From Ylistrum balloti (taxonomy: Eukaryota): DNA of 64,000 nt. The notes under the pieces were generated by a model, which was not told the DNA's origin, ran no database searches, and saw only the letters and a program-made list of their open reading frames with translations. Where the stretch lies: the NCBI RefSeq assembly GCF_031769215.1, contig NW_026782003.1, forward strand, positions 4,030,001 to 4,094,000, given 5' to 3'. The position numbers were made by a program, and so were the translations under genes. Below, in pieces: positions 27,570-53,544 of the stretch. Within the stretch, counting starts at the first letter, position 1, and each line of letters opens with the position of its first letter.

Positions 27570-30500
27570 TATATTGGCCAATGTTAATGTTTTAACGCAA
27601 AGTTTTAAACAAAGAATTTTGTGAACAAATGCAAAAAATCAAAGTCATAGCTTTAATGTTATAACTTCCGATATCCTCTCTTTTTATCGAATTATTCAAA
27701 GCAAAAAAAAAACAACATGTAAGCAATTATAAATAAATGAATTATATGATGGAGGATAATTACATACACATTGTAGTCAAAATATTATAAAGACTCAATT
27801 TACGTGCATAACCAAACTATTTCTTGATACTGTGAAAAATAACGTTTTACGTATATTCACTCGTGTGTGTTTTGTTTAAACTTTTTGCAAGTTTGCAGGT
27901 GGCATACACTGCTGGTGGAATACATGTCGTCGAGGTTTGCCGTAACCTGCTTGTCAACCCATATATCCGTATCTGATTTATTCATATGATCTCGGGTTGT
28001 GATTTCTCTGTGATCTCCAGTATGAAATAGATGAAGTACCATGCTTTGGTGACCGGTGCCTTGTATGGGTATAACATTTAAGTGGCTGTGAACAGATGCT
28101 AGAGGTTTATGTATTGATTAATGGCTGTCCAGATCCCTGAAGTACTCGAGTATACTATTAGTCATTAAATATTCACGATTTCAGATATTTATTGGTTCTA
28201 TGGATTTACCTTGAATCATTATCACAGTCCCTCGATATGAATATTTGTCTTTATATATGAAGGGAATTAAGAGTTTGCAATAATCCATAAATTTAATTGG
28301 TACCTTATATGTAAATATCATTTATATGATAACCGATTGTAAGTCCCACGGTAATCGTGATGAATGTTGACGTATGAGTCAGAAAAGTTAGGTTTCGACT
28401 ACAGAAGATATTTCATTCTTGTTCGAAAAACTTTTCCATTATTTACAATTTTAGTTTCTACTATGATTTAAAGTTTTTACCTATTTAAATATGATGATAT
28501 CCTAAGACATGTGTATATCTGATAGAACATAAGAAAACTTATACGGACATCATAACTTAAGATATCACCAAGCTTTGATCTCTACGACGCGGAAAACAAC
28601 TGGATATAAACATATTTTTATAAAACTGCGAATTGTGTCATTTTTACTTGTATGGAGTTACAAATCCAGGCGATTTTACTTGTATTCATTATCCCGATTT
28701 TAGTGCAAGATGTCATCAGCTGACAGACAAATTCACAACACACAGATGCTGTTTGATGGAAATTATTGGTAAATCTTGTGGTCGCCACAGTGATCTCATT
28801 GAGAAATATGAAATATTTTATCTGTGCGATATGAAGAGTCTTTAAGGATCTCTTTAAGAAAGAATAGAAATTTACCCACGCACCAAAGTAAATTAAAGTG
28901 GGTTGTATTTGTAGCACCTTGAGTGACTACCCATGAAATAGGATTTAAAAATTCAAAAGGTCCATAGGGCCTGTGCTACGATCAATTTAACGTCGTAACT
29001 ATAGGAGTACGACAGCCTTCAGTTTTTCATCTGAAAAAAGTATTTCGACCACAGCGTACATTAACAAATTATATACTGTTTGATTAACAAGGATCGATTT
29101 GGCAATATGGTGGCAAATATGTATCAAACTATTGCAAAATAAAAACATCATGTAGTTTCGAAAAAGTATGATATATTTGTTTTACATTTTTCAGTTAAGA
29201 CAGTTTTTCAAAGGACTGAAGCCTGTACTTCCAATTAGAATGCACCAACAATATGTTTATATTATTTGGCCATGTAGAACAATTGGTAAAAAATTCAGGG
29301 AAATAGAGAGCCGGTTAACGTGTCATTTAAAAGCCAAATGATTAGTATCTCAATTTTAGTCAGTTTTGTTGGATTTCGACAGGGGTCAGTATTTCCTCAA
29401 AAATATGTTGAAACAATGGTATACATAGTCATTTTTGAATAAGTAGATTCTGCTGCAAGTTTCAATGTCAAAAATGAATATAAATATTGTTAATTGATAA
29501 AATTAACAAAAATTAAAACAAAAATGAGATTTTTCGACAGTTTCTTTTTTTTGTCTATATTTTGTCTATCTTTTTGAATTTCAGTTTGTTTTTTTAAACT
29601 AAAAAATTATCATTAACTTAAATCCTTATAGGAATACCAAACTCCTTCAATAAATCGATGATTTGTTGGCTTAATAAGAAATCCATTGACCATTTGGATG
29701 GCCTGATTTTCATCCTTTTTCAAGACGAGAAACTATTAGCGATATCTTGGGACTGTCATTTGAGTATCCTGGACAAATATGCAGACAAGGCTGAATATTG
29801 TGTTACATAGGCAAGCAGTTACATCAGCTTAAGTTGGAAATTGACAACATCTTTGTAGTATATAGAATATATGTCAAATCTTTGTTATATTTGTATAATT
29901 ACATGTGTTTTCGTCTAAAGTTTTAAATGTGTATCTTCAAATCATGTTTATGGGAAAAAATATATGGTTTCAGTATCACTGTAAGATATTTGGCAATTAT
30001 TATTTTGTCTTGCTAGCTAATGAAATAAAAAAAAAGATTGAAGGGAACGATCATCAAATGGCTTTCGCGAAGTCTTGTGCAAAGATAAACCTTCTGCACG
30101 TATACATTGGCCTTATTAAATAAACTGGATAAATTGTTGTCGAATGATATTCCAAGGTCATTGAAAATACCATACATAAGGATATAAAGATGGTAACTAA
30201 GGGTTAATGCATTTCTTTATGATTTAATCGTTGCAATAGATTTTTAGATATAATGTAATTACAAAGTCTAGATACGGAGTAATCTGGGTATATGAATCTC
30301 CGGTATCAAAAATGCTACCTTGTCTTAGCTAGGAAAAATATCATATCGTAATATCAAGAAAAAGAATTTCTACCTAAATCCTGTTCAAATGAGAAGATAT
30401 GAATCTTAACAGAAATTAGTTATGAAGAGATCTCTATACAATAATTAGATGTAAGACCTGTTATATCGCAAAGAAACCCGTATTATAATCAGGAATAAGC

Positions 30501-33415: not shown

Positions 33416-34783
33416 ATGAGAAGACTTAATATAAACGCTGCCCGGAAGTATATCTTCAAATTTCGTGTTTTATTTCCTGTGATAGGAATTCTCATCTTAT
33501 ATTTTGTATACAAAAGTGAAATCAAAAGCACAACTATTCCATATTCGGGACAGCTTCCAACGCAAAAGCATGTTATCACAGAATATAACAGGTATATGAC
33601 TACTTTCCAAACGAATCATGCAAACAATTCTGTCCCTAAGGAACGAGGCGACCTGCAACAAAATGGTGACCGGAAGGAGACTGGAAACCAAGATATTAGA
33701 GAAGTTAAGCTAGTCGCAAATGATGAACGGATCGCTATGCCGGAAGATAATGTCGAGGATGAAAGATATCCGGGCACATTTTCCCCTAGTGAATATCCAT
33801 CTGCTGTCAACTTAACCGGGATTTTAAACCAGTACGATATGAAAGGTTATTCGGATGAACAGCCAGTTAATGATATTCATTATAGGTATTTTGTTAATCC
33901 CAGGCACATTTGTAATGTTTCCAGCGACATCAAAGTGTTATTTATTGTGAAAAGTAGCCCATGGCACACATCAGCTCGGCAAACCATCCGAGAAACTTGG
34001 GCAAACACAAAACGGTTTCCATCAATACGGATTATCTTCTCTTTCGGAACTCCAAAACAAAGTAAAAGACTTGAAGCCTTACTGGAGGAGTCCTCTACTC
34101 ACAAGGACATCCTCATCGTGAAAAATTACATTGACAATTATTACAATTTGACCTTGAAGACTGTTAGTGGTTTAAAATGGGCGGTAACCCACTGCGCACG
34201 CGCCTCGTATGTAGTGTCTGTTGATGACGATATTTACGTCGCACCTGATTTGCTGCTTAGATTTCTTCACAGACCACAGATTCGGAAAATTCATAAATTC
34301 TTCTCCGGTCATCTCTTAATAGGTACAAAACCTATAAGGAATCCTAAGGATAAATGGGCCATTTCCTTATCCGAATATCCCTTTCAGAACTATCCGAATT
34401 ATATATTCGGAGGCTTTGTTATTATGTCAATGTCTACAGTGAAATCATTTACCATAGCAGCACAGTATACCAAGTTATTCAAATTTGAGGATGTGTATTT
34501 GGGGATTTTAGCAGCTAAACTTGGAATAGAAGCCACTAATAATGGGTATGTTAACTCTAGGAAAACATTCACTGTTTCTGAATCATTTAGGACAATCATT
34601 GCTTCTCATTTTTACAGCGATCCAAAAGAATTACAAAGAGCATGGGACTGTCATTTGAGTATATTGGACAAAAGTGACGAGAAATCAATTTTTTGTGACT
34701 ATATTGGCAAACGCTTAAAGAAGCTGAAGTCAGAAATAGACAGTATAGTTAGCTGGATGGAAAATGTCAAGTTCAACTCATAG
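33416..34783 (+). CDS. GT31 beta-1,3-glycosyltransferase (B3GALT/brainiac-like), paralogue 1, 455 aa, short stem
   Basis: Type II signal anchor VLFPVIGILILYFVY; VKSS, RQTIRETW, DNYYNLTLKT, VDDD (DxD), YPNYIFGG, FEDVYLG. Single coding exon; acceptor-like ccttcag at 33388 just upstream. Confidence 0.95.
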   Translation: MRRLNINAARKYIFKFRVLFPVIGILILYFVYKSEIKSTTIPYSGQLPTQKHVITEYNRYMTTFQTNHANNSVPKERGDLQQNGDRKETGNQDIREVKLVANDERIAMPEDNVEDERYPGTFSPSEYPSAVNLTGILNQYDMKGYSDEQPVNDIHYRYFVNPRHICNVSSDIKVLFIVKSSPWHTSARQTIRETWANTKRFPSIRIIFSFGTPKQSKRLEALLEESSTHKDILIVKNYIDNYYNLTLKTVSGLKWAVTHCARASYVVSVDDDIYVAPDLLLRFLHRPQIRKIHKFFSGHLLIGTKPIRNPKDKWAISLSEYPFQNYPNYIFGGFVIMSMSTVKSFTIAAQYTKLFKFEDVYLGILAAKLGIEATNNGYVNSRKTFTVSESFRTIIASHFYSDPKELQRAWDCHLSILDKSDEKSIFCDYIGKRLKKLKSEIDSIVSWMENVKFNS

Positions 34784-34874
34784 GTACAGAAGTTTGAGTA
34801 TAATCATTTAATTAGATGTTGATAACGTTAATATATACCAGTGGTAGACAGTGCCTTAAAACTACACGTTAAAT

Positions 34875-35335
34875 ATTTATAACGTTAACGTCACCAGGTA
34901 GACCTAACTACACCATATTTATAACGTTAACGTCACCAGGTAGACCTAACTACACCATATTTACAACGTTAACGTCACCACCGCATTGTGTAGACCGGAT
35001 TTATTACTTACACTGTATTTATTACATATTTATAATTAACGTAGTCCTACTACAGCCTATTATTAACGTAAACGTCACCAGGTAGACCTAACTACACCAT
35101 ATTTATAACGTTAACGTCACCAGGTAGACCTAACTACACCATATTTATAACGTTAACGTCACCAGGTAGACCTAACTACACCATATTTATAACGTTAACG
35201 TCACCAGGAAGTCCTAACTACAGCCTATTATTAACGTAAACGTCACCAGGTAGACCTAACTATACCATATTTATAACGTTTAAGTCACCAAGTAGATCTA
35301 CAGAATATTGATAACTTTAACATCACCAGGTAGGT
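34875..35335. repeat. 42-bp minisatellite with palindromic ACGTTAACGT core, directly after GT31 gene 1
   Basis: Unit atttataacgttaacgtcaccaggtagacctaactacaccat, interrupted at ~34980-35040. Confidence 0.9.
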
Positions 35336-35869
35336 AGATACACAGATCATTTGTACAATATATTTATGACTGAATACCACCAGTTTGATATATTAATTCA
35401 GCAGCTTTAGTGAGTGTACAAGCAGATCCAGATATGTTCTCAATATCTTGATAACAGTTTTTTGTTTCCATTTACGACGGAAGTTCTTGTCTTCTAACAT
35501 CGACATTAGATATTTGTTGTTTTATCGTAAATTTTCTTACTAGTCCAAGACGTTCTCAGGGAGATAACTCTGAATTGTTTGTGCGAAATGTGTAGTTATT
35601 AGGGAGATACATTCAGCTAGTGATTAATAAACACAAATGGCGACCAACATAGATGCAAATTTATTGTTTTATTATTTAATTTATTTTATTATTTATTCAT
35701 CAAGGAAAAAAATTATTTCACATATCTAGATGTTGTTTTTGGGACAAACTCCCTTGGGAACATCGATTTTTTTATTATCACTTTATACGAACGTTTATAG
35801 ACATTTTTAATTAAAGACTACCGTGACGAAGCATTACATATTCAACAAACCTCCCTCATAAAGTCATAT

Positions 35870-36085
35870 CATCCACACTGATGACGTGCTATTTCATATA
35901 CTATTGACCTCACTGATGACGTGTAATCCATATACTATAAACCTTCATGATGACATTATATTGTATAAAATGTATAGCTTTCCCTAATGACGTACTATCA
36001 TTTATATACTATAATATGATATAATCTCCCTGATGATGTGACATCGTTATGTAGAATTGATGCAGATCTCGCTGATGACGAAATA
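35870..36085. repeat. degenerate ~36-42-bp repeat with ctgatgacgt cores, paralogous to 40330-40640
   Basis: ctgatgacgt at ~35878 and ~35913, with decayed copies at ~35949, 35986, 36031 and 36072. Confidence 0.65.
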
Positions 36086-37720
36086 TTGTACTGCATGTTT
36101 TGGTGTTAATAATGTTAATATGTCTACAGACGGTATTAAGGACAAAAAGTTACAGGAGACGTCTATCTCGCTAGTTTATACCATAACAACTTTTAGTCAC
36201 AGCCCTTGAACACAACAGTTGCACAACTAAACAGAAACCAAAAACACCGCTTTCTAATTTCAAAATACTGATTGCTTGAATACTTTTTCTTTAATGACAA
36301 GAGAAAAGTGTTTCAATACTTGTATGAGTAGACACTGGATTCTAGATATGAGGTTTCCGGTCAAGATCAAACAAATACTTTTCAATTAACAATATAACTC
36401 GATCTCAACTGGATGAGCTCGTCTGTTCCTCAAGGACGTTATAATTGTAAGGTTTCAATGCTCGTTATCAGCCTGATTATTGTCGAGTGAAAAACATTCA
36501 CAGAACAATTCATATCATTTCATTTCATGAAAGTAAAACTTCTCTAGAATAAATAATTGTATTTCTAAGTCATGTAAAGACATGTCTATGGCATCTTTAT
36601 ACTATTTAAAGACAATATGTCTGAAAGAGGTGTTAGATATAGGACTGACATAACACGAGCATTGATATCTTATTTTGGAAGCTAGTACAACTAATTCATG
36701 TAAAATTATAATTTTATCTAAAATTTGTCGATTTACGATAACAAAAAAAATCGTCACCTCCTAAAATTAATTTGAATTTTTACAAAAATAGATCAGAATG
36801 AATGCCGAGTGTAAATTTAGGAAATAAAATAAACCAAAACAAAATTTATTTACTTTCGTCGATGCCCCGAATTTTATCGCCTTGTATGTAAAGATTCCAT
36901 GGAAATGTAGAATAGAATCATAATAAACGTGCTAGGGATAGGATTCCTCGCCGAATGCTTTTTTCTTACCATAACTTTATCACTTGCGGGAAAAGTTCAT
37001 TTCACCATTTTTATAAGCGATAGAACACAACATAACAAACAATGACCTAAATACCCAAGGGTATTGCATTTTCCTTTGTTTAAAAAATCATTTTAAAAGT
37101 CTATCATATCGATCTCAACATTAAAATAAGGGACATGACTCTGAAATGTGGCCTTTTATCTAAACTCACTATAGCATCAATCTATCAATCAATATTATAT
37201 GTATCGATCTCAAAATGTGGCCTACCATAGTCAAGGTATCAAATAGACACAATTTAACATTTCCGTTAATCTAAAATATTCACAAATAATTCTTATGGCA
37301 GTATAGCTGTTTGACCTAAGCCATTGGACGACACCGAAGCTACTCATACTCGAGTCATGGTGAAAGAAATACGTAACAAATACTATACAGATATCAGTCC
37401 TTTCTTGTCCCGTCTCATATTTAAAATATAATATATATATGGGTGTAAGTACTACCATAGTATAGAGAGTTAGATATTTAAACCTTAAATGGTTGTCTTT
37501 GTTGTCCAATATAATTGCTGTGTAAAAACTATGTCGGATCACGTTATGTCGTCTTTAAGAAATTTTTATCCTTTGAATTTGATGAATTTGTATTTAAAGT
37601 ACAGTTACGTGACAAAAAATATTTAAAGACCTGAACACAAGTTGGAGTACTTTTAACTGGACAAACACGACAGAGTATAGTTTATTTTTACAGAACAAAC
37701 CTTCAGAAATCAAAAGAATT

Positions 37721-38410
37721 ATGCAGAAACTAAGAGCACTTATTTTGCCCTGGGAACACACCTGGAAAATTTGTTTATTATTTGTGCTAATTGGAATGTG
37801 TATTGTGCTCTACCTTTCTACGCTGAATGAGAAGAATATTTACCAAACTTCCAGAGTTTATTTTCAAAGGAAACACGTACAATTAATTGGAGCAAAGAAA
37901 GAAGAAAACATTTTAAAACGTTTAAGAAGAAATAGTTTTCCAGCTAAGAATAACCGAAGGTCAGATTCGAACAATTTTCGGAAGAAACAAGAGAAACAGG
38001 ACAAAATATCATTCAACCAGAAACACGCAAATCAGAGCAAAGCAGGGTCAAAGTTCACACCTGATGGCTATCCTATGTATGTAAACATGATTGACATCGT
38101 AAGACAATATGAAATGAAAGGCTACGCTGATCAACAACCTATCAACTATTTTGATTATAGTTATACCAACAACCCCAATCATACATGTGACCAATCGGGA
38201 AAGATACAATTGCTGGTCATAGTAAAGAGTAGCCCGGATCACAAAAACAGGCGAATAAAAATTCGTGAAACTTGGGCTAGCAGAAAACGGTTTCCAGCGG
38301 TTTGTAAGTTGCAATTCAGTTTTGTGTTTCTTGTAAAACGTCATATCGACAGAGGGAATAAAATGAATATTGTGCTGGAGTCATCGTGTATACCTAGGGA
38401 ACATTTATAA
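37721..38410 (+). pseudogene. 3'-truncated GT31 paralogue 2: TM, short stem and start of the catalytic domain only
   Basis: Homologous to gene 3 up to RIKIRETWASRKRFPA (38299), then unrelated sequence to a stop at 38410. Lacks the NLTLKT, DxD and EDV motifs. A GTAAGT at 38304 coincides with the break. Confidence 0.8.
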
Positions 38411-39445
38411 CATTACCGTCACCACGTAGATTTTCATAATATATAAGTATAACGTCATCATGTTTACTTACTGAATATTTTAATGTTAAAATCACCAAAC
38501 AGATTTACACAATATTTATATCTATAACGTTAATGTCATCAGGCAGAATTACAGAACATTTATAACGATAGGTCGCTAGTTAGGTGTACAGAATATGAAT
38601 AAAGTTAACGTCGTCAGTTAGGTTTACAGAATATGGATAACGTTAACGTCGCCAGTTAGGTGTACGAAACATGGATAACGTTAATGTCGCCAGTTAGGTT
38701 TACAGAATATGGATAACGTTAACGTCGCCATGAATAACGTTAACGTTGTGTTAGGAAACATGGATAACGTTAATGTCGCCAGTTAGGTTTACAGAATATG
38801 GATAACGTTAACGTCGCCAGTTAGGTGTACGAAACATGGATAACGTTAATGTCGCCAGTTAGGATTACACAACATGGATAACGTTAACGTTGTAAGTTAG
38901 GTTTACAGAACATGAATAACGTTAACGTTGTAAGTTAGGTTTACAGAATATGGATAACGTTAACGTCGCCAGTTAGGTTTACAGAACATGGATAAAGTTA
39001 ACGTCGCCAGTTAGGATTACACAACATGGATAACGTTAACGTCACCAGTTAGGTGTACTAAACATGGGTAACGTTAATGTCGTCAGTTAGATTTACAGAA
39101 CATGAATAACGTTAACGTTGTAAGTTAGGTTTACAGAACATGGATAACGTTAACGTCGCCAGTTAGGTTTACAGAACATGGATAGCGTTAACGTCGTCAG
39201 TTAGGTTTATAGAACATGGATAACGTTATTGTCGCCAGTTAGGTTTACAGAACATGGATAACGTTAACGTCGCCAGTTAGGTTTACAGAACATGGATAAC
39301 GTTAACGTCGCCAGTTAGGTTTACAGAACATGGATAACGTTAACGTCGCCAGTTAGGTTTACAGAACATGAATAACGTTAACGTCGTCAGTTAGGTTTAC
39401 ACAACATGAATAACGTTAATTTCGCCAGTTAGGTTTACAGAACTT
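38400..39445. repeat. 38-bp minisatellite, ~27 copies, same family as 34875-35335
   Basis: Unit gataacgttaacgtcgccagttaggtttacagaacatg shares ataacgttaacgtcRccagKtag with the 42-bp unit. Confidence 0.95.
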
Positions 39446-40329
39446 GAACTATTCACGCAGCAATTTTTAGTGAGTTTGCAGACATATCGAGATATGATTT
39501 CAATACCTTGATACAAGTTAGTTGTTTTTATTAATGACAAACGTCTATTTTTCTAAGCTCGACAATGAGTATGTGTTTTTGTATTGTCAATTTTCTTGCT
39601 CTTCCTGGCGTTTTCAGGGACATAACTATTAACTGAATCAAGTGTGCGCATGTGTAGCTATAATGGAATTGCATTGATCTAATAATTTATCTATCAGTTT
39701 ACTGGCTATATGTATATATATCTGCTCATTACTTAGTATTGTTATTTATTTGTATACCTACATATATTCATTATTTAATAGCTATTATGTAGTGTATACC
39801 TAGATCTATTCAGTTACGTGAATTAAATGTATAAGCTCATTGTTTTTGTATTGACAATTGGCTTCCTTTGAACAATAGAATATCAGACGGAAACAGTAGT
39901 ATCCAGGCAGTATCACTGGCCACCTCCATTAACCTGATAATAATCACAACAACGGTGAACAACTGAGAGAAGATTGTACAAGAATCATCAGTAAACAGTA
40001 CCTTTTATACTAGTCTGGAGATGTATACAGTAGCTCTAGGACTCGTCAGTGATACGAAGGGCCTATTTTCATAACGTAGGAGTCGATATGAAAAATGCAA
40101 ACTAATTAAAAGAAATGAAAAACGTAAGATGGGGAGGTCCACTAGCCCCATGATTCAATAAATATAATATTCTGATTATTTTTTCATAATGCCATTCTGA
40201 ACTATGGAACTATCCGAATGAAAGTCCCGGTGAAGCTTTGCACATAAAGTATATTGTCTTTTATACAAGGTGTACTATAGACCTCCGTGACATAATATTA
40301 GTATATACACTATACTTCCTTGTTTTCAA

Positions 40330-40640
40330 AATATTGTTTTATACACTACAGACCTCCCCGAAGACGTAATATTATTCTATATACTATAAACCTCCCTGAT
40401 GACGTGATATTATTTCATATATCAAAGACCTCTCTGATGACGTGATATTTTTTCTTATATTATAAACCTCCCTGATGACGTAATATTATTTTATATATTA
40501 TAGACCTCCTTGATGACGTAATATTATTTCATATATTATATACTTCCCCTATGTCATAATATTGTTTCATCTTATATATACCTCCGTGGTGACATAATGC
40601 TATCTTATGTACAATTGACTTTTGCTGACGTCACATTATC
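40330..40640. repeat. 38-bp-period degenerate repeat carrying TGACGT cores
   Basis: TGACGTGA at 40400 and 40438, TGACGTAA at 40476 and 40514, TGACGTCA at 40626. Confidence 0.8.
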
Positions 40641-42274
40641 AACAGATAGATAAAAAAATATGTTACTTTAAGAGCTTAATAACACGTGCTATGTCTTTTT
40701 TATCATTATTATCAATTCAGTTAATCGTATATTGGTGTTAGAGACAATCTGACTACAGCTGATATCAAGCACACAAAGTCGCAGGAGATGTACATGGTTT
40801 CTACCATTCCAAGCATTTTTTTTGTTAATGTACTTGCACACAACATTTGCACTATTAACTGAAAACAACACATTCTTATTGTTTTAAGATCCTTTCTTGA
40901 GTAACAAATATAAAAATGTGAAATAATTATAAAAGTAGGCACTTGATCGAAGGCATGAGGTTTTCGACCAAAAGCAAACAAATGCTTTGTTTGTTTTTCA
41001 ATACACAATACTGCTCGGTCTCAACTGGATGAACAAGCCTACTAGCAAAGCACAATATATAAGGTTGTATTACCAATTATCGGTCAAAGTACAAATAACT
41101 CACAGAACAACTTAATTATCTATATCATTACACTTTAGAATTTACAAAACAGACTTCTCTATAATACATAAAGTGTTTATTTAATAGCATGCAGAGATAT
41201 GTTTATGGTATCCTAATACTACATGTATTTACAGACAACGTATAAATAGGGATAGAGACGTTAGCTATAGGACAGACATGAATGAGCATTGATAGCCCCG
41301 CTAGCCCAGTCACCAAGTATAAAACTATAACCAGATTTAAAATTTGCCAATTCAAGACCAAACGTCGTATTCAATTAAATTGTTATGATTATGAGAAAAT
41401 TCGAAATAAATGCGTCGTATAAAAATTAAGGTGACTTCCCGGTGTGGTCTATTTAGAAAATCTGCATAATTGCATTCTCAGACTAATCAAGAGCTTCTAA
41501 CGTCATTTAGAAAAACAATAATATCTTAAACTGATTTAGCGTTTATTTCGTCTATATATAATCGTGTTGCATAAAAGGAATCAACGGACATGTAGAATCA
41601 TAAATGGGTATGAAATTTCTTTTCAGAGCCTTGTTTCTCACTAAAACTTTACATCATTTGGAAGAAATACCACACAACTGTTCTTACACATGACTGAACA
41701 TTTTCACGAGGAACACATGTAACTTTCACACGCAAAAGTGGGTGAAACAATGTCAACATAACAACTAATGATGTAAATATAGTGGGCTTTGTTTGCTTAC
41801 TTGTTAAATTGATTTCAACAGTGTCGCCTACCATAGTCAGAGGGTTGAATAGACTACAGGACATTTATCGTAAAATCAATGGTATAATAACAAGTCATTC
41901 TTTTTATAGTACAATAGTTTGTATTCGACTCATGATCATAGAAATACGTTACACATACTATATAAATGCCAATACTCCGTTGCGCCGTCTTCTATTTAAA
42001 AATAAAATCACTTGTGAATGTACGTACAACCTTAGTATGCGGAGTTAAATATTTAAACCTTTAAGGGTTGACATTGTTGTTCGATATAACTGCTGACACT
42101 AACTCTGTTGGATCACGTTTTGCATTCTTTAGAAACTCTTCACCATTTGAGTATTTTTATTTATAGTCAATGTGTATGACGACAACATTTAAAGAACTTA
42201 ATACAACTCGGAACATTTACAACAAGTCAAACAGAACAGAGTATAGTTGATTTTCGAAAAGCAAATCTTCAGAC

Positions 42275-44311
42275 ATGGGAAGACCCAAACATAAATTAAG
42301 AACTTTAATGTTGCTCTGGAAACACATGTGGAAAGTTTGTTCTGTGTTAGTGCTGATTGGAATGTTTATCATGGTCTACCTTTCTACAACGAATGACAAC
42401 AAGATGGACCAAACGTCGGGAGTTAATTTTCAAAGGAGACATGTACAACAATTTGAAACAAATAATTTAAAAAGAAATAATCCGTCAAGGTTTTCAGTTA
42501 GGAAAAAACGACGGATGGATTCGAAAGATACTTTGGAGAAACAGTACAACATGTCACCTAATCTTAAAACTGCTAATCAGGGAAATAAAGAAATCAACAA
42601 TCGTGATCGCGCTAAAAAACAGAAGGAGGATGCAAGATACGAACATTTTCCTCGTCAAGACAGAGATATTGATCATCAAGGAGATACCGCTAACGAGAAT
42701 CTCTATCGAGGTGAACAGCTGGAAAATCTACAAAAGGACGAACAAGAAAATATCAATCAGGACGAACAAGGAAATCTCAAAAAGGATGAACAAGAAAACA
42801 TCAAAAAGGACGAACAAGAAAATATAAAAAAGGATGAACAAGAATACGTCATTCAGGACGAAGAAGAGAATCTCAAAAATGACAAGCAAGTAAAGAGCAA
42901 TCAAGAAGAACAAGAAAATCTCAAAAAGGGCGAACAGGAAAACATCAAAAATGACGAACAAGAAAATCTCAAAAAAGACGAGCAAGGAAATGTCAAAAAG
43001 GACGAGGAAGGAAATCTCAAAAAGGACGAGGAAGGAAATGTCAAACACGAAGAACAAGAAAATATCAAAAAAAGTGAACAAGAAAATCTCAAAAAGAGTG
43101 AACAGGAAAACATCAAAAATGACGAACAAGAAAATCTCAAAAAGGACGAACAAGAAAATCTCAAAAAGGACGAGCAAAGAAATGTCAAAAAGGACGAGGA
43201 AGAAAATGTCAAACACGAAGAACAAGAAAATATCAAAAAGGGTGAACAAGAAAATCTCAAAAAGGGCGAACAAAATGATTTAAATTATCAAAGCAAAGTA
43301 GGAGCAAAATTTACACCTGATGGCTATCCCATGTATGTAAACATGAGTGACATCGTAAGACAATATGAAATGAGAGGCTACGCTGCTCAACAACCTATCA
43401 ACTCTTTCAATTATAAATATAACATCAACCCCACTCATACATGTGACCAATCGGATAAAATAAAATTGCTGTTCATAGTAAAGAGTAGCCCGAAACACAA
43501 TGACAGGCGAATAAAAATTCGTGAAACTTGGGCTAACAGGAAACGATTTCCAGCGATAAGGACTGTTTTCTCAATTGGAATTCCAGGAAGTGGGACAACA
43601 TTATTAGATTTACAGGACGAATCAGTTACATATAAAGATATACTCCAAGTGCATTATCTTGATAACTATTACAACCTTACCCTGAAGACAATTACTGGAT
43701 TAAAATGGGCAGTGACTAACTGTGAACGTGTCCCATATGTGTTATCCGTAGACGACGACATGTATGTTGCAACCGATTTGCTGCTTAATTTTCTCTATAG
43801 ACCAAATGTACGCAAAATAAATGCTCTCTTCTCTGGTCATCTTTTGGTCAATACAAAGCCCATTCGTAGCGATCATTCTAAATGGTTTTTGGAGAAGTCT
43901 GAATACCCCTTTCAGAACTATCCGAATTATATATTCGGAGGATTTGTTATTATGTCAATGTCTACAGTGAAATCATTTACCATAGCAGCACAGTATACCA
44001 AGTTATTGAAATTTGAGGATGTGTATTTGGGGATTTTAGCAGCTAAACTTGGAATAGAAGCCACTAATAATGGGTATGTTAACTCTATGAAAACATTCAC
44101 CTCTTCGGAATCATTTAAAACACTCATTGCCTCCCATTTTTACAGCGATCCAAAAGAATTACAAAGAGCATGGGATTGCCATTTAAGTACAGTTGACGAT
44201 GACGATGACAAAGCCATTTTCTGTGATTTTATCGGTGATCGTCTACGCAAAATACAATATGAAATTAATAGCATAGTTGGATGGCTTGAAACCGTTAAAT
44301 CTCGGTCATAG
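42275..44311 (+). CDS. GT31 paralogue 3, 678 aa, stem with 23 copies of an 8-aa ENLKKDEQ-type repeat
   Basis: TM VCSVLVLIGMFIMVYL; 24-bp repeats at 42722-43273; VKSS, RIKIRETW, DNYYNLTLKT, VDDD, YPNYIFGG, FEDVYLG. Confidence 0.95.
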   Translation: MGRPKHKLRTLMLLWKHMWKVCSVLVLIGMFIMVYLSTTNDNKMDQTSGVNFQRRHVQQFETNNLKRNNPSRFSVRKKRRMDSKDTLEKQYNMSPNLKTANQGNKEINNRDRAKKQKEDARYEHFPRQDRDIDHQGDTANENLYRGEQLENLQKDEQENINQDEQGNLKKDEQENIKKDEQENIKKDEQEYVIQDEEENLKNDKQVKSNQEEQENLKKGEQENIKNDEQENLKKDEQGNVKKDEEGNLKKDEEGNVKHEEQENIKKSEQENLKKSEQENIKNDEQENLKKDEQENLKKDEQRNVKKDEEENVKHEEQENIKKGEQENLKKGEQNDLNYQSKVGAKFTPDGYPMYVNMSDIVRQYEMRGYAAQQPINSFNYKYNINPTHTCDQSDKIKLLFIVKSSPKHNDRRIKIRETWANRKRFPAIRTVFSIGIPGSGTTLLDLQDESVTYKDILQVHYLDNYYNLTLKTITGLKWAVTNCERVPYVLSVDDDMYVATDLLLNFLYRPNVRKINALFSGHLLVNTKPIRSDHSKWFLEKSEYPFQNYPNYIFGGFVIMSMSTVKSFTIAAQYTKLLKFEDVYLGILAAKLGIEATNNGYVNSMKTFTSSESFKTLIASHFYSDPKELQRAWDCHLSTVDDDDDKAIFCDFIGDRLRKIQYEINSIVGWLETVKSRS

Positions 44312-46207
44312 GTGCTTGTTAGTAACAGTGTTCTCTTTCTTATCTTCCTTGTCTCTGTTTATCGTCTGATTAGACTTCATGTGACAAAGGATGATGCCAG
44401 CACGTAATTGATATATGGATATAAAACGTTATATCCCTGACTTAAATACATCTTCCCTCATAATCACTCTGTCGATCAGGATGATTATTTGAGGGTTTAC
44501 TGTACAATAAACGACAGTTTTCATTAATTGACAGATTCATTTAATTGATTGTTCTGTGTTTAAGCTGTTTAAAGTAAATGATGGGATTAGGTATTATTAT
44601 GCATTGGAACTTGGCGTTAATATTTAACGCTTTATGTGGCTATTGTTATTCATTAAAGTAGAATGAGTATCCAAATTGATTGTATGATGTGTCAGTTACA
44701 TTTTTTAATCATATGTAGAATCACGGTTCCATAAGTGATGAACAGTAATGCCTGACCAGACACGTGGCTCGTGTGTCAGTTGCTTAAAAATATGAATGAA
44801 ACACAAATCATATGTAAGAAAAATTATCATTTCTGTAACATGTAAGTTGATAACGTATAGATTTGGTTCCCCGGTGTCATGATATCTATGGGATATAACA
44901 TGCCACGATCTTTTTTTATATCGAATACTTCTGATAATGACATGTAATTTCGGATTATTTATTCCACAATGGCAACACAGAGAAGTAGTTAAATGTGAAG
45001 TGGTTTAATATCCACTACAACTATTCAAACATCGTGATATTGATAGAGTCGACAATCACTTTAACCTTGCTGATGAAGCAAGTTTTTGCTTTCCTGTTGA
45101 CTCACTGGAAATGGTGATGCCGCAGAATTGAAGAAGAAGTCAAATTTCTCTTCCAACCCCCATCTACGCTTCGATTTTACCTGCCAGACATTTACGGTCC
45201 TTTGTACACCGCTTGTATCAGGTTTAATTAGTTATTGTAATATTATAGAGTCTTTGAGAATCTGAAATGGCACTAACGAAGATTCCTATAGGAGAAGCTG
45301 TCAATCAGAGAATCACTTTCAGTAAAATTAAAGCAAATTCAGGAATACCAAACACATAAGGACGAACGTCGGAAATCAAATCCTCCTTCCTAAAAGTTCC
45401 TCGTCAATTCCGGTCTCCCTTCAAATCAAGTCCCTCGTCAAATCAAAAAGATGATTTAGGCATAGCTAAAACGTCATTACGGCAAACACTGGAAAATAAT
45501 TATGACTGAAAATAAACTACTAATATCGTAAAGAAATTCGTCCATTAAGATCGGACTATAATCAGACTGGAAATTCGTCAATCTGTTTTTAAAACATAAA
45601 ATATGTCCAGGCTTTAACACACATCGAACATTTTATTTCTGCTGTGTAGTTAAAAATCAATTTTGTAGGTAATTTGAAAATTTTTCGACATATTTTCATT
45701 CATGTATACTCTATGGTAGACAAAATATCCTATCGGCCTTCTGTTTAAGATGTTCGAGAATGTTATCATTATAATCACTACAGATAAGTCACCGCTTCAT
45801 ACAGCTAACTATCTACATTAATATTCTGCCATTCATTTAAAATTCCGCTCGACGACAATGAAGTGATATCACTCTGTTTAGTCATAAAGTACAGTAACAA
45901 TGAACGATTCATAAAAACTGTCAAATCATAAAGGTGTGTATTATCTTTCTATAAATCAGTCAAAATATGTGTATATGGGATAGTTTACGTGTGTGATGTT
46001 CTGTTGGGAAGCTTTGCAATAATAAAGAGCCTTCAGATTATCAAATAATTAAAATGATTTTTACTTAAACAATGAAAATTGCTTCCGTCCAATTGTTGAA
46101 ATGCAAAGACGCTGAGCTATTGAAAACAATTGCTAGGCGTGTTTGAGACATCAGATCTAGAACACAGACCCAGATTTTGACTCCTTTCTTGGAAACGCTT
46201 TCTCATA

Positions 46208-46510
46208 ATTGAAAACGTGTAAGAAAATTTATTTGTATACCCAAAGTAGATTGCAATTAGAAGTGAAGCCATTTTCTATCTAACCATTTCAAACCTTTGA
46301 TATTTCACATGAAAACTTGCAAGAAAATTAATTTATATACCCAAATTAGATTGCAATTAAAAGTGAAGCCGTTTTCTATCTAACCATTTCAAACCTTCGA
46401 TGTTTCCAATGAAAACGTGCAAGAAAATTTATTTGTATACCAAAAATAGATCGTAATTAGAAGTGAAACCGTTTTCTTTCTAACCATTTCAAACCTTTGA
46501 CGTTTCAAAT
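46208..46510. repeat. 100-bp tandem triplication
   Basis: gaaaacKtgYaagaaaatt...accatttcaaacct starts at 46211, 46311 and 46411. Confidence 0.9.
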
Positions 46511-47183
46511 TTTTCAATGCAATCAGTGAGAGGTTATTAATTTTCCGAATCTGATATTATAATTGCTGTTGCTTATCAATGCGTCAGGGCGTCATCTTTT
46601 TCTGTCATCAAACTATTGCTTTTCTCTGCTACCTTATTTAACTACTCTAAACAATTTCCATTCATATCCATTGTGAATGGATAAAACCCCCACCCCCTGC
46701 ACAGGATTTGACAGTATTTTAAATTTCTTACATAGCGGTGTGACTAAGGGTCATGTAAACTGGGCTCTTATTTAAATAATACATTCTGTCCACAAAGAAG
46801 ACACTCGAAGTTGTTTGAATAATGGAATTTGATAACTTTCGCTGTATATACCGATATGAATAAATGCTGGGGATATGAAAACGAACGTGTTTGATATATA
46901 GCAATAGGACTATAATGTGACCTCTTTTGTATTCTACATAAAACATATCCCATTGTTATCAAAGTCACGATTTAGTATATGATAGTAAAAACTTTTTTGA
47001 TGATATTGTCTATCTTAATATGCAAATATCCAGTGTCAGCTAACATACCTTAAATAGAGTTTCCGTCACGATTAGTAAAAGACACTAGAAACAGTTGATG
47101 TATATTTACATTCATGAAACTTGCTCAGCACTTTACAGTTTAAATCGCCAGTCGTACGAGATAGGGGTAATGCAGAGGTGAAC

Positions 47184-49217
47184 ATGCTGCGACATAAACG
47201 TGGTATAAGATCATTTATGGTACTCAGGCGACATTACGTCAGAATTGTCTCAGTCTCAGTACTGACTGTTGTAATCCTCTTCCTCTTTCTACACATTAGA
47301 GATAACATCAATGGTGCCGCCGATAAATCTTACGTCATCACCAAGAAGAGTCCTGTCCATGACTGGCAAGAGGAGAAAATACTTCGTTCCTACAAAGAAA
47401 CGAAAGATTATTTCTTCTCAAGGAAAAATAAATCGGAGGGCAATACCGAAACTCAGATACGATTCACTCTGCAGCAAAATGGTTTTTCAGAGGCACAGGG
47501 TTATATAAGGAATACAACACGTAATGAAAGTGAAACTCGTGAAATAGATCATCATTTCGATCAGCAAGAAGACATTGCTCAGCAAGGTCATGACAAGACT
47601 GATAAGATAGCTAATAACATGGGTCATCAAATTGTTCAACAAGGAGACATCACACGGAAGCAGGGTGGCCCGGAGAATGAGATTATTCAACAAAAAGATC
47701 AAGTTCAGCAAGGCCCAGACGCACATCGATTCGTTCGACAAAACGATATAATTGTTAAGGATATTGACACGGGTCATCAGCTTTTACAACAAGGGGGCGT
47801 CGCTCAGAAGAAGGATGACACGGGTCATCAGATTTTACAACAAGGGGGCGTCGCTCAGAAGGAGGATGACACGGGTCATCAGCTTTTACAACAAGGGGGC
47901 GTCGCTCAGAAGGAGGATGACACGGGTCATCAGCTTTTACAACAAGAAGGCGTCGCTCAGAAGAAGGATGACACGGGTCATCAGCTTTTACAACAAGGGG
48001 GCGTCGCTCAGAAGGAGGATGACACGGGTCGTCAGATTTTACAACAAGAAGGCGTCGCTCGGAAGGAGGATGACACGGGTCGTCAGCTTTTACAACAAGG
48101 GGGCGTCGCTCGGAAGGAGGATGACACGGGTCGTCAGCTTTTACAACAAGATCATGACATTCATCAACTTAGACATATTAATGAAATGAAGATCAACGAA
48201 AAACCGTTTACGCCAGATGAGTATCCACTAAATGGGAATCTATCTGATATCGTGCGTCAGTATCAAACAAAGGGATATGCCGATGAGAAACCAATAAATG
48301 TTTTTGATCACCGCTACATCATTCATCCAGACCAAACATGTAGTGGAAACGATACAATAAAGGTGCTATTTGTAGTGAAAAGTAGTCCAGACCACAGCAT
48401 GAGGAGGGCAATAATTCGTAAAACATGGGCCGACAGAAAACGATTCCCCTGGACTAGGACTGTTTTCTCCTTCGGGATACCAGAATATAGCAAATCGTTA
48501 GTAAATCTCCAAGAAGAATCTGCCAAAAGCAATGACATTCTCCTTGTAAGTTATTCTGATACCTACTACAATCTGACCCTGAAAACTATACATGGAATGC
48601 GGTGGGCAGTAACTAATTGTGCACGTGCTATGTACGTAGTGTCCCTAGATGATGACATCTACGTTGCACCCGATTTACTGCTTGGTTTTCTTGACAAACT
48701 TCCGGTACGAAAAACAATAAAACTCTTCAACGGTCATTTGATGACTGCCACTTCCCCAGTACGGGATGCAAAAGGAACTTTCCAAAAGTGGTATGTTACA
48801 ACAAATGAATACCCCTTTCAAAACTATCCTGATTATATATTCGGAGGGTTTGTTATCATGTCAATGTCTACAGTGAAATCCTTTACCATAGCAGCACAGT
48901 TTACCAAGATATTGAAATTTGAGGATGTGTATTTGGGGATTTTAGCAGCAAAACTTGGAATAGAAGCGACATTTAACAGTTATGTTGATTCTAGAAAAAC
49001 AATAACTGCTTCGGAATCATTTAAAACACTCATAGCATCTCATTTTTACAAGGATCCGTTTGATTTACAAAAAGCTTGGGAATGTCATTTAAGTATCATT
49101 GAAAATGATAGTTCCAAGAGTATATTTTGTGTTACCATAAACACGCGTTTGCATGAACTGCAATCTGAAATAGACAAAATCGTCGATATGGTGGAATCTG
49201 TGAAGAAATACGTGTGA
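47184..49217 (+). CDS. GT31 paralogue 4, 677 aa from the first ATG, stem with ~7.5 copies of a 17-aa DTGHQLLQQGGVAQKED repeat
   Basis: TM IVSVSVLTVVILFLFL; 51-bp repeats at ~47765-48150; VKSS, RRAIIRKTW, DTYYNLTLKT, LDDD, YPDYIFGG, FEDVYLG. The ORF track starts at a TTG (47121); the ATG is at 47184. Confidence 0.95.
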   Translation: MLRHKRGIRSFMVLRRHYVRIVSVSVLTVVILFLFLHIRDNINGAADKSYVITKKSPVHDWQEEKILRSYKETKDYFFSRKNKSEGNTETQIRFTLQQNGFSEAQGYIRNTTRNESETREIDHHFDQQEDIAQQGHDKTDKIANNMGHQIVQQGDITRKQGGPENEIIQQKDQVQQGPDAHRFVRQNDIIVKDIDTGHQLLQQGGVAQKKDDTGHQILQQGGVAQKEDDTGHQLLQQGGVAQKEDDTGHQLLQQEGVAQKKDDTGHQLLQQGGVAQKEDDTGRQILQQEGVARKEDDTGRQLLQQGGVARKEDDTGRQLLQQDHDIHQLRHINEMKINEKPFTPDEYPLNGNLSDIVRQYQTKGYADEKPINVFDHRYIIHPDQTCSGNDTIKVLFVVKSSPDHSMRRAIIRKTWADRKRFPWTRTVFSFGIPEYSKSLVNLQEESAKSNDILLVSYSDTYYNLTLKTIHGMRWAVTNCARAMYVVSLDDDIYVAPDLLLGFLDKLPVRKTIKLFNGHLMTATSPVRDAKGTFQKWYVTTNEYPFQNYPDYIFGGFVIMSMSTVKSFTIAAQFTKILKFEDVYLGILAAKLGIEATFNSYVDSRKTITASESFKTLIASHFYKDPFDLQKAWECHLSIIENDSSKSIFCVTINTRLHELQSEIDKIVDMVESVKKYV

Positions 49218-51820: not shown

Positions 51821-53544
51821 GGGTGTTCCCGATTTGCCCACTTTTTTTAACAAAGAAAGGTGTTGAAGACAATAGAAAACCAATTATAGCCAGTTTCAGA
51901 TTGACTATAGATTTCACCTGAGTTCATTTACCTGTGTTTTTTCCTGTGTGAGATATTACCAGAGATTCTACCTGTAGTCTTCACTAAGTACTTTTCATTA
52001 AACATGCAAAGCAGAAAGTTTATCATTTCTTATACACATTACATACATAAAAATATAATAAAACATAGTATTCTAAAGGATGTTTGACAGTCCAGCACAT
52101 TGCACATTATCATCAGTCCAGCAATTCATCCCAGGTGTAGAAGATGTGATGCTGCGTCGGCGTACTCCATGATGTTGATCCTCTGAGTCTGGAATCGCTC
52201 CTTAAGTTGGGCCAGTCTGTTGTCGATGCTTCGATATCTCTTCGCACGTGGTCTTGTTGCTCCTCCTGCATCACGCTGTATCCTGTTGATTTCGTCGGCG
52301 GCTTGAATGTCCTGGAACACTTTGATGATGGTGTATATGTTGGGGGCTTCCCATGCCAGGCTTCTAGATGGTTGGTGGTGCGAGGTCCCTCTGTGGTGAA
52401 GTGGTTCCAGATACGGCGGTCTCCCTCAATCCACTGTGTAACGCCATAATCTGTAAAGGGCGTAGTGTCCACGGGTAAGTCAACATCTTCCAGTTCCTCC
52501 AGCGCGTTGAACCAAACATCCTCAACTCTTTCCAGTGGTACCAAAGGCAGCACGGCAGCCAGGCGAACTAGTCTTTTGATGACGTGGTTCTCTGAAAAGT
52601 TGCTGAAGTCCGGTTGGCTGGGCTTTCCTCCAAATACACTGGGTAAAGTGGAAAAACATCCTTTGATGGTCACTCCTGGGAACACTTGGCGTAGGGCGTT
52701 GCGAGCTGCTGTCTCGAAGTCAACAAAGGCAGATGTAGGACGCATAGGGAGGTTGAAGTCAATCATGGTTGTCTTCAGTAGCATCAGGAAACGGGTATAC
52801 AGCTGCTGGGTCTTACCGGGTAGGGGTGTGTAAACAAGAGGATACATGTGGCCGTCAATAATGATAATGATGAAGTCTGATTTCCCCCACATTTAGATAA
52901 TCATTGTGGCTTGGGATACCTGCTCATCATCAGCTTGCATTATCATAATGATTCTGTGTGTGCATGGAACAGTGTTCACTATCTGGTAACAGCACTATCA
53001 TCACCACTTCTGAGATCATCTTATAATTGTTTGTATTTGAGGTCGATGGCTTGGAGGTATAATAAAAAATTAATACTGTTAATACCAAAAAATGAATACT
53101 ATTAATATCAATGGATATTTTGTTTAATTATACATAATGATTAATATCCTAAAATATTTCATCATCATTATCAATTTATTTAATATGGGGTCCTTAATAT
53201 ATATTGAAGTCAGACAAATTTATCAAAAATGTAAAACTTTAATTCTGATATAATGTAATATTCTAGTGAATTTTAACCTCCTCTAGTAATTGAAATTTAT
53301 ACATTTAAGAAAAAAAAGTCTTTAATTTGTTTTCAGTGACATATATATCAACATAAAGAAAAATTTTTAAAAACTCAATAAAATAGCTATCATTTAATAG
53401 ACTAGATGGCATAGGTGACCATAGGTAAAATACAGGTAAAAACACAGGTATTCACAGGTAAATAAATAAGAAATAGACTATAATCCTTATCAGAACATTC
53501 TTCTGCCCATGTGATTTTAAAAAGTGGGCAAATCAGGTACAGCC
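51821..53544 (-). mobile_element. Mutator (MULE) DNA transposon, internally deleted, both ends preserved
   Basis: TIRs GGGTGTTCCCGATTTGCCCACTTTTT and (reverse complement) GGCTGTACCTGATTTGCCCACTTTTT match 23/26. 9-bp TSD CTAATTTTG at 51812-51820 and 53545-53553. Transposase remnant 52126-52892: PLVY..LPGK, FVDFETA, GCF(F)HFTQCIWR (frameshifted), TTNHLEAWHG. Confidence 0.9.

What the first reader, a model, noticed from the sequence alone, without database searches (positions are those of the whole stretch)
33416..49217. GT31 array whose paralogues carry independently evolved, very different repeat stems
Seen: four same-strand paralogues share TM and catalytic architecture. Genes 1 and 2 have short stems. 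Gene 3 has 23 x 8-aa E/K/D/Q units (24 bp, with a 7-unit higher-order duplication). Gene 4 has ~7.5 x 17-aa Gln/Gly units (51 bp) that are unrelated to those of gene 3. Both expansions keep frame and sit just before the shared (F)TPDxYP motif. Established: glycosyltransferase stems influence Golgi localisation, complex formation and shedding. Inference: repeat number may tune reach or localisation, giving a glycan-diversification cassette.
Basis: partly seen in the sequence, partly recalled or inferred. Interest (0 to 1): 0.7.

Follow-up and report, generated by a model that had tools for sequence, protein, structure and literature searches.

The report
Scallop glycosyltransferase genes with repeat-built stems
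Two neighbouring Golgi-type sugar-transferase genes of the saucer scallop have each lengthened the stalk between membrane anchor and enzyme domain to about 305 residues with a different in-frame DNA repeat. Related scallops do the same with other repeat units, which looks like tolerated repeat turnover in a floppy spacer, not a proven tuning device.

Summary
Gene 3 (42275-44311) carries 23 x 24 bp (8 aa), with a 168-bp higher-order unit. Gene 4 carries 7.6 x 51 bp (17 aa). Both arrays end 12-19 residues before the F-T-P-D-x-Y-P start of an intact GT31 domain.

Three corrections:
- Gene 2 is a 5' fragment (pseudogene), not a full paralogue.
- Gene 4 starts at the ATG at 47184.
- The array also holds a decayed 3' relic at 29715-29851.

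The genome is Ylistrum balloti. The genes belong to a scallop-specific tandem array with orthogroups A, B and C. It evolves by birth-and-death, with a local gene-conversion block.

The A stems are stable at 88-102 aa. The B and C stems range from 115 to 306 aa and carry coding minisatellites of 24, 33, 42 or 51 bp, depending on species. Gene 4's unit is shared with the Pecten maximus orthologue, so it is inherited and then amplified. Gene 3's unit matches nothing known.

Only these two of the 30 best GT31 loci in the genome have coding repeats. AlphaFold models the stems as disordered or weakly helical.

No RNA data were available, and repeat-number polymorphism could not be read. The functional idea (reach or localisation tuning) remains untested. 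Interest is modest.

The parts
29715..29851 (+). Decayed relic of the C-terminal ~45 residues of a family member. It has a frameshift and stops, and is closest to D- or A-type proteins.
   Evidence: tblastn, 52-65% identity in two frames
33416..34783 (+). g1, the orthogroup A GT31 gene. 455 aa, intronless, type II. Short 90-aa stem without repeats.
   Evidence: ORF. PF01762 E=1.5e-46. Groups with the P. maximus 456-aa and A. irradians 455-aa proteins at 100/99 support. Stem length.
37721..38410 (+). g2, a truncated B-like pseudogene fragment: tail, TM, 76-aa stem and the first ~65 residues of the catalytic domain. Homology to g3 ends at 38299.
   Evidence: No Pfam hit. tblastn and blastn segment map. 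Alignment A3. Its junction sequence also appears in the contigs of other individuals (loose ends at 43287 and 43555).
38475..41294 (+). Flank behind the g2 breakpoint, homologous to the 3' flank of g1 (35051-36667). It includes the 38-bp satellite at 38524-39443.
   Evidence: Self-blastn, 64-73% identity. TRF.
42275..44311 (+). g3, the orthogroup B GT31 gene. 678 aa, TM ~21-39, 306-aa stem. Catalytic domain with RRIKIRETW, DDD 493-495 and EDVYLG.
42722..43273 (+). g3 stem array: 23 x 24 bp (8 aa, consensus E-N-L-K-K-D-E-Q), with a 7-unit (168 bp) higher-order repeat x 3.2.
   Evidence: TRF. Unit table. pN/pS 0.28-0.37 between units and higher-order copies.
43928..44065 (+). Core of the gene-conversion block shared with g1 (34400-34537) and g4 (48834-48971).
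   Evidence: DNA identity of 97-100% (g1-g3) and 90-97% (with g4), against 50-75% elsewhere. Longest identical run is 79 bp. g1 contigs of other individuals lay on g3 here.
47184..49217 (+). g4, the orthogroup C GT31 gene. 677 aa from the conserved ATG, TM ~18-36, 305-aa stem, confident GT-A catalytic domain.
47610..48150 (+). g4 stem array: 7.6 near-identical 51-bp (17-aa) units at 47763-48150, preceded by about 3 degenerate older units.
   Evidence: TRF. Unit table. Same period and similar unit in the P. maximus orthologue, L032:10383-10502.

Best explanation
This is a scallop-family-specific tandem array of intronless genes for type II Golgi-type GT31 beta-1,3-glycosyltransferases, closest to B3GALT5 and B3GNT2.

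In Ylistrum balloti the order is: relic, A (g1), truncated B-like pseudogene (g2), B (g3), C (g4). The array evolves by duplication, decay and local gene conversion.

The A stem is short and length-stable. The B and C stems are long, hydrophilic, Q/E/D/K-rich, S/T/P-poor and largely disordered. In them, in-frame minisatellites arise, amplify and decay, presumably by slippage or unequal exchange in a minisatellite-rich genome.

As a result, each species has its own unit length and copy number. The g3 array is a lineage-specific 8-aa unit. The g4 array is a recent amplification of an older 17-aa unit.

Inferred: the stem acts as a flexible spacer between membrane and catalytic domain. It is constrained mainly to stay open-reading and hydrophilic, so length changes are mostly tolerated and not finely tuned.
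For: Shown:
- GT31 identity: Pfam; PDB sequence match to B3GALT5 at 2e-28; Foldseek to B3GNT2 and B3GALT5 with TM 0.70-0.86; conserved motif residues.
- Species: own-genome ORFs are 100% identical to NCBI Y. balloti proteins.
- Orthogroups A-D are well supported. Gene order is syntenic in A. irradians, P. maximus and M. yessoensis, each with its own broken copies.
- Coding tandem repeats occur in orthologue stems: 33 bp x 10.9, 51 bp x 2.4 and 42 bp x 2.1.
- Stem lengths: A 88-102 aa, B 115-306 aa, C 123-305 aa.
- Unit relatedness: g4 vs P. maximus p=0.016; M. yessoensis vs A. irradians B units p=0.004; g3 vs all others not significant.
- AF2: the g4 stem is coil with pLDDT 30-38. The g3 stem has pLDDT 30-72 with patchy helices.
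- g3 units have pN/pS of about 0.3 and no indels, so they have been translated under constraint.
- In four resequenced samples the listed indels fall in intergenic DNA. The only coding exception is three 1-base gaps summing to 3 bases in a collapsed repeat contig.
- 11.4% of the window is tandem repeat.
Against: - No expression data were available for any of the genes.
- Whether copy number varies between individuals could not be read.
- The near-identical stem lengths of g3 and g4 (306 vs 305 aa), built from unrelated repeats, are not predicted by a purely neutral model.
- Only 2 of the 30 best GT31 loci carry coding repeats. A generally repeat-prone genome is therefore not a sufficient explanation, and something about these stems is special.
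- The pN/pS estimates rest on few, non-independent and compositionally biased sites.
Confidence: 0.7

Rival explanations
1. Adaptive tuning. Repeat number sets the reach, sub-Golgi localisation, oligomerisation or shedding of each enzyme, and selection on stem length diversifies the glycans the array makes.
For: - g3 and g4 reach almost the same stem length (306 vs 305 aa) with unrelated units.
- g3 units have pN/pS of about 0.3.
- Repeat-bearing stems persist in the B and C orthogroups across four scallop genera.
- Coding repeats are restricted to these two of the 30 best GT31 loci.
- Stems of Golgi enzymes are known to mediate complex formation (PMC10715278, listed).
Against: - There are no expression, localisation or activity data.
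- B and C stems are not length-matched in A. irradians (246 or 115 aa against 128 or 123 aa).
- The B gene of P. maximus is split by a frameshift in its stem.
- g4 units differ almost only by non-synonymous changes.
- In resequenced individuals the g3 stem outside the array shows 5 non-synonymous and 0 synonymous differences.
- AF2 sees no ordered structure in the stems.
Confidence: 0.17
2. The g3 array is exonised satellite DNA. A member of a genomic A-rich satellite family was inserted or copied into the stem and became a 24-bp in-frame unit.
For: - The 24-bp consensus matches the 23-bp satellite on contig C592 (about 334 copies) at 18 of 24 positions with one gap.
- Shuffle test p=0.004.
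- The g3 unit is unrelated to the units of its own orthologues.
Against: - The satellite was picked as the best match in a 648-Mb repeat-rich genome, so the p-value ignores a very large multiple-testing burden.
- The second match, a 20-bp satellite, is not significant (p=0.23).
- A degenerate proto-unit sits at the 5' edge of the array (unit -1), which fits local origin by slippage.
Confidence: 0.08
3. g3 and/or g4 are unexpressed, recently dead genes, and their repeats are decay products.
For: - No RNA run holds the locus.
- The array contains dead copies (g2 and the relic).
- Orthologous copies are broken in other scallops.
Against: - The ORFs of 2.0 kb are intact.
- All family-invariant catalytic residues are kept.
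- The g3 array has no indels, no stops and pN/pS of about 0.3 despite pS up to 0.6.
- ORF-preserving variation only was seen in four other samples.
- The lack of RNA runs reflects what data are served, not silence.
Confidence: 0.05

Closest known systems
Animal GT31 B3GALT/B3GNT enzymes (human B3GALT5, PDB 8zwp; B3GNT2, PDB 6wmm/7jhk). Family reviewed in PMC8022947.
   Same: - Intronless coding exon and type II topology.
- Pfam Galactosyl_T domain and GT-A fold.
- Motif I (R-x-x-I-R-E/K-T-W), a DDD (DxD) motif, F-S-G, G-G-F-V-I-M-S and E-D-V-Y-L-G.
   Different: - Stems of about 305 aa built from tandem repeats.
- A conserved ~45-residue C-terminal helix beyond the end of B3GALT5.
- The last position of motif V is L, not W/C. 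Motif IV has V where Y is usual.
- Donor and acceptor are unknown.
- The clade is restricted to scallops among the hits. The next relatives are at 47% identity or less, and hits outside scallops at 54% or less.
RefSeq-annotated scallop orthologues ('beta-1,3-galactosyltransferase 5-like / 1-like / brn-like' of Mizuhopecten yessoensis, Pecten maximus and Argopecten irradians)
   Same: Same orthogroups and gene order. Their B and C stems also hold coding repeats.
   Different: - Units and copy numbers differ: 33 bp x 10.9, 42 bp x 2.1, 51 bp x 2.4.
- The Y. balloti copies have the longest stems.
- The 8-aa unit is found nowhere else.
Neck-region VNTR of the type II lectins DC-SIGN / L-SIGN (CD209 / CLEC4M; PMC3261175)
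   Same: - Type II membrane proteins encoded by neighbouring paralogues.
- An in-frame tandem repeat forms the stalk between the TM segment and the C-terminal functional domain.
- Stalk length is set by repeat number.
   Different: - The lectin neck is a 23-aa coiled-coil unit that drives tetramer formation, and its polymorphism is documented.
- Here the units are 8 and 17 aa, are not heptad-like and are modelled as disordered or weakly helical.
- Polymorphism is untested, and the proteins are enzymes of the secretory pathway.
Single alpha-helix (ER/K) spacer domains
   Same: The g3 array is E/K/D/Q-rich. AF2 draws helices over parts of it (residues 170-231, pLDDT 52-72).
   Different: - The charged fraction is only 0.53.
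- There are 0.16 opposite-charge i,i+4 pairs per residue.
- The helix prediction is patchy and of low confidence.
- The array should not be filed as a SAH domain.

Membership tests
CAZy GT31 / Pfam PF01762 Galactosyl_T | Domain match above the Pfam gathering score | tested here: met
   g1 159 bits, g3 157 bits and g4 139 bits against a cut-off of 23. The g2 fragment has no hit.
CAZy GT31 / Pfam PF01762 Galactosyl_T | Five signature motifs I-V, as defined in PMC8022947 | tested here: met
   - Motif I: R-R-I-K-I-R-E-T-W in g3 (411-419).
- Motif II: DDD at 493-495 (g3), 489-491 (g4) and 270-272 (g1).
- Motif III: F-S-G, with G521 invariant.
- Motif IV: G-G-F-V-I-M-S, with V where Y is usual.
- Motif V: E-D-V-Y-L-G-I-L, with L where W/C is usual.

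CAZy GT31 / Pfam PF01762 Galactosyl_T | GT-A fold resembling solved GT31 enzymes | tested here: met
   The g4 model has catalytic pLDDT of 84-96. Foldseek gives B3GNT2 at E=8e-22 (TMt 0.70-0.76) and B3GALT5 at TMt 0.86.
CAZy GT31 / Pfam PF01762 Galactosyl_T | Type II topology: short basic tail and one N-terminal TM segment | tested here: met
   The hydropathy maximum is at residues 13-39, preceded by R/K-rich tails. AF2 models a helix there with pLDDT 71-87. This is prediction only.
CAZy GT31 / Pfam PF01762 Galactosyl_T | Beta-1,3 transfer of Gal, GlcNAc or GalNAc from a UDP-sugar | not testable with these tools
   Needs an enzyme assay. The B3GALT5 and B3GNT2 matches are too distant (24-26% identity) to assign a donor.
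Coding minisatellite / VNTR | Head-to-tail units with a period divisible by 3, inside an intact ORF | tested here: met
   24 bp x 23 and 51 bp x 7.6, with 0% indels and no stops.
Coding minisatellite / VNTR | Copy number varies between individuals | tested here: inconclusive
   Contigs of four DNA runs break at both arrays (42751-42961, 43210 and 47794). No record spans either array.
Single alpha-helix (ER/K) domain | Very high E/K/R content with dense i,i+4 salt-bridge pattern, and a confident long helix | tested here: not met
   Charged fraction 0.53 and 0.16 i,i+4 pairs per residue. AF2 helices are patchy with pLDDT of 72 or less.

The most novel reading that the evidence does not exclude
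Stem length itself is the selected trait. On this reading, B- and C-type enzymes of the saucer scallop have converged on a stalk of about 305 residues by amplifying unrelated repeats. The reason would be that the two catalytic domains must sit at the same height above the Golgi membrane, for example in a heteromeric complex or to reach a bulky mucin-like acceptor. Coding minisatellites would then serve as an evolvable molecular ruler for glycosyltransferases.
Probability: 0.1. Interest if true: 0.65.

Novelty: new variant of a known kind. Interest (0 to 1): 0.3.

Why it matters
Stems of Golgi glycosyltransferases are usually treated as nondescript linkers. Here, orthologous enzymes in four scallop genera rebuild the stem from different in-frame minisatellites (8, 11, 14 and 17 aa), while a neighbouring paralogue keeps a fixed short stem.

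That gives a natural series of stem lengths from 115 to 306 aa on near-constant catalytic domains. The series could be used to test whether stem length affects Golgi localisation, complex formation or shedding.

I found no description of repeat-built glycosyltransferase stems in the searchable literature. Without expression or functional data the finding remains a descriptive evolutionary curiosity in an otherwise ordinary gene family.

Tried and rejected
1. RNA evidence. The look-up of sequencing runs returned only DNA runs, so expression could not be tested.
2. Repeat-number polymorphism. The contigs laid break inside both arrays. The three 1-base 'left out' calls at 43217-43223 sum to 3 bases in a high-depth collapsed contig and are taken as mis-registration, not a frameshift.
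3. g2 as a 5' exon with an intron. A GTAAGT follows the breakpoint. No downstream catalytic exon exists, and g3 has no acceptor at the homologous site. Rejected.
4. g2 as the ancestral short-stem state. Rejected. g3 shares the Q-D-R-D anchor with the P. maximus B gene and g2 lacks it. The g2 short stem is therefore a secondary deletion.
5. g3 array as a single alpha-helix domain. Not met.
6. g3 unit derived from a genomic 23-bp satellite. The similarity is real, but the satellite was selected as the best of a whole repeat-rich genome. Kept only as a weak rival.
7. Homologues of the g3 stem. None among 8000 scored candidates. The low-complexity composition limits what this blank means.
8. L028 looked like a third GT31 gene with a coding repeat. 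Its 39-bp array lies after the stop codon.
9. The large representative-protein search was not run, because no claim here depends on it.
Full report
**What is there**

The region holds three intact, same-strand, intronless ORFs with a Pfam Galactosyl_T (GT31) domain:
- g1, 33416-34783, 455 aa.
- g3, 42275-44311, 678 aa.
- g4, listed from a TTG at 47121. Its conserved start is the ATG at 47184, giving 677 aa, as shown by alignment with g3 and with orthologues.

All three have a short basic tail and a hydrophobic segment within residues 13-39, modelled as a helix. They also have the family motifs: R-x-x-I-R-E/K-T-W, a DDD triplet, F-S-G, G-G-F-V-I-M-S and E-D-V-Y-L-G. The motif definitions come from PMC8022947.

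The g4 model has a confident GT-A catalytic domain with pLDDT 84-96. It superposes on human B3GNT2 and B3GALT5 at TM 0.70-0.86. By sequence the closest solved protein is B3GALT5, at E=2e-28.

**The repeats**

g3 has 23 units of 24 bp at 42722-43273, with 77% matches and no indels. Three and a bit copies of a 7-unit, 168-bp higher-order repeat are visible.

g4 has 7.6 units of 51 bp at 47763-48150, with 94% matches and no indels. About three degenerate older units lie at 47610-47762.

**Gene 2 is not a full paralogue**

- Its 229-aa ORF has no Pfam hit.
- Positions 37347-37899 match the 5' flank and start of g3 at 73%.
- Positions 38031-38299 match g3 43287-43555 at 89%. Homology then stops.
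- What follows (38475-41294, including a 38-bp satellite) is homologous to the 3' flank of g1.
- No remainder of the catalytic domain lies before g3.
- The same junction sequences appear as loose ends in contigs from other individuals, so this is not an assembly artefact.

A second dead piece, the last ~45 codons of a family member with a frameshift and stops, lies at 29715-29851.

**Whose genes these are**

ORFs elsewhere in the same assembly are 100% identical to NCBI proteins of Ylistrum balloti.

The catalytic domain finds close relatives (57-70% identity) only in scallops. A maximum-likelihood tree resolves four orthogroups:
- A: g1 with the P. maximus 456-aa and A. irradians 455-aa proteins.
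- B: g3 with the M. yessoensis 529-aa and the A. irradians 615- and 496-aa proteins.
- C: g4 with the P. maximus 531-aa and the A. irradians 498- and 481-aa proteins.
- D: no intact member in this genome.

Gene order is conserved: A then B in A. irradians, A then B then C in P. maximus, and A then B in M. yessoensis. Each species has its own wreckage. The P. maximus B gene is split by a frameshift in the stem, and M. yessoensis has an extra frameshifted copy. This is birth-and-death evolution of an old array.

**Stems across species**

Stem length is measured from the end of the TM segment to the F-x-P-x-x-Y-P motif:

| Orthogroup | Stem length (aa) |
|---|---|
| A | 88-102 |
| B | 115-306 |
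| C | 123-305 |
| D | 103-134 |

Coding tandem repeats are detectable at the DNA level in orthologue stems:
- 33 bp x 10.9 in the A. irradians B gene.
- 42 bp x 2.1 in the M. yessoensis B gene.
- 51 bp x 2.4 in the P. maximus C gene.

A composition-controlled shuffle test gave the following:
- The g4 unit is related to the P. maximus 17-aa unit (p=0.016).
- The two foreign B units are related to each other (p=0.004).
- There is a weak B-C link (p=0.04).
- The g3 8-aa unit is related to none (p=0.23-0.82).

The g3 stem also has no homologue in the large protein collection. The g4 51-bp unit occurs nowhere else in the genome.

So the g4 array is a recent amplification of an inherited unit. The g3 array is a lineage-specific unit that replaced whatever its ancestor had. 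'Independent expansions of unrelated units' holds. 'Independently evolved stems' needs the qualification that repeat-proneness is an old, shared property of B and C stems.

**Is it chance?**

The window is 11.4% tandem repeat, with 23 arrays. Earlier notes of the scan describe minisatellites as common in this genome. Even so, among the 30 best GT31 loci of the genome only g3 and g4 have a repeat inside the coding sequence.

**Selection**

- Between g3 units and between its higher-order copies, pN/pS is 0.28-0.37, with pS from 0.16 to 0.6. The array is old and has been translated under constraint.
- g4 units differ at 8 positions, almost all non-synonymous, giving pN/pS of about 1.7. This is a young array with no sign of constraint and very low power.
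- Four resequenced samples carry the locus with about 1-2% of bases differing. The indels listed lie in intergenic DNA.
- The g3 differences listed are 5 non-synonymous to 0 synonymous in the non-repeat stem, 0 to 2 in the tail/TM, and 3 to 3 in the catalytic part.

**Structure of the stems**

AF2 models the g4 stem (residues 82-339) as coil with pLDDT 30-38. It models the g3 stem with patchy helices at pLDDT 30-72.

The g3 array has a charged fraction of 0.53 and too few i,i+4 salt-bridge pairs for a canonical single alpha-helix. One hydrophobic residue per 8 cannot form a coiled-coil seam; this is inference from helix geometry.

**Best explanation**

The stems act as flexible, hydrophilic spacers in which in-frame minisatellites arise and turn over. 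They are tolerated as long as the frame and the hydrophilic character are kept.

The tuning idea is not excluded. The one observation in its favour is that g3 and g4 reach 306 and 305 residues by unrelated repeats. B and C stems are not matched in A. irradians, however, and the coincidence was noticed post hoc.

**What could not be done**

No RNA run holds the locus. Short-read contigs break in both arrays.

**Literature**

Searches found no report of repeat-built glycosyltransferase stems. The nearest analogue in architecture is the neck VNTR of DC-SIGN/L-SIGN (PMC3261175). Stem-mediated complex formation of Golgi enzymes is documented (PMC10715278).

Noticed in passing
g1 34400-34537, g3 43928-44065, g4 48834-48971 (the block extends to about g3 43922-44101): Local gene conversion. 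DNA identity is 97-100% between g1 and g3 and 90-97% with g4 across the Y-I-F-G-G...G-I-E-A-T block, against 50-75% in the rest of the catalytic domain. The longest identical run is 79 bp. g1 contigs of other individuals align onto g3 here.
   Followed up: partly
window 34873-35333 and 38524-39443; also 35876-35954 and 40330-40598: The non-coding satellites behind g1 and behind the g2 breakpoint share unit cores (e.g. ATAACGTTAACGTC and CTGATGACGT). The duplicated unit of the array therefore included its 3' satellite flank.
   Followed up: partly
last ~45 residues of g1, g3 and g4 (e.g. g4 residues 634-676): A conserved C-terminal extension beyond the end of human B3GALT5. It has conserved Cys at g4 634 and 649 (nearly invariant) and a long helix (residues 647-676) modelled at pLDDT of about 70. 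It is shared by the whole scallop clade, and its function is unknown.
   Followed up: no
G000:C893:115000-152000, C15:458692-460452, C89:216562-218268: Other GT31 loci of this genome show two catalytic-domain matches inside one open frame of 730-770 aa. These may be double-domain GT31 proteins lying in a dense cluster on contig C893.
   Followed up: no
L034 (G000:C592:481000-488700) and L035 (G000:C136:913600-918700): Large non-coding A-rich satellites: 23 bp x 334 and 20 bp x 255. The 23-bp unit matches the g3 24-bp unit at 18 of 24 positions. This may be chance, given how it was selected.
   Followed up: partly
stems of B and C orthologues (window g3 and g4; L031:10371-10730; L032:10383-10502; L033:10455-10541): The repeat units are 8, 11, 14 and 17 aa (24, 33, 42 and 51 bp), an arithmetic series in steps of 3 residues. 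The 14-aa and 17-aa units can be aligned by eye with three 1-residue gaps (their shuffle test, p=0.09, is not significant). This is possibly successive 9-bp indels in one ancestral unit, and possibly coincidence.
   Followed up: partly
window 52113-52892 (- strand): A 259-aa ORF with a weak MULE transposase domain (E=1.2e-6), probably a transposon remnant just downstream of the array.
   Followed up: no
L032:2758-4252 and L033:857-2461: The B gene of Pecten maximus is split into two frames inside its stem. Mizuhopecten yessoensis has an extra frameshifted A-like copy. Array members decay independently in each scallop.
   Followed up: partly
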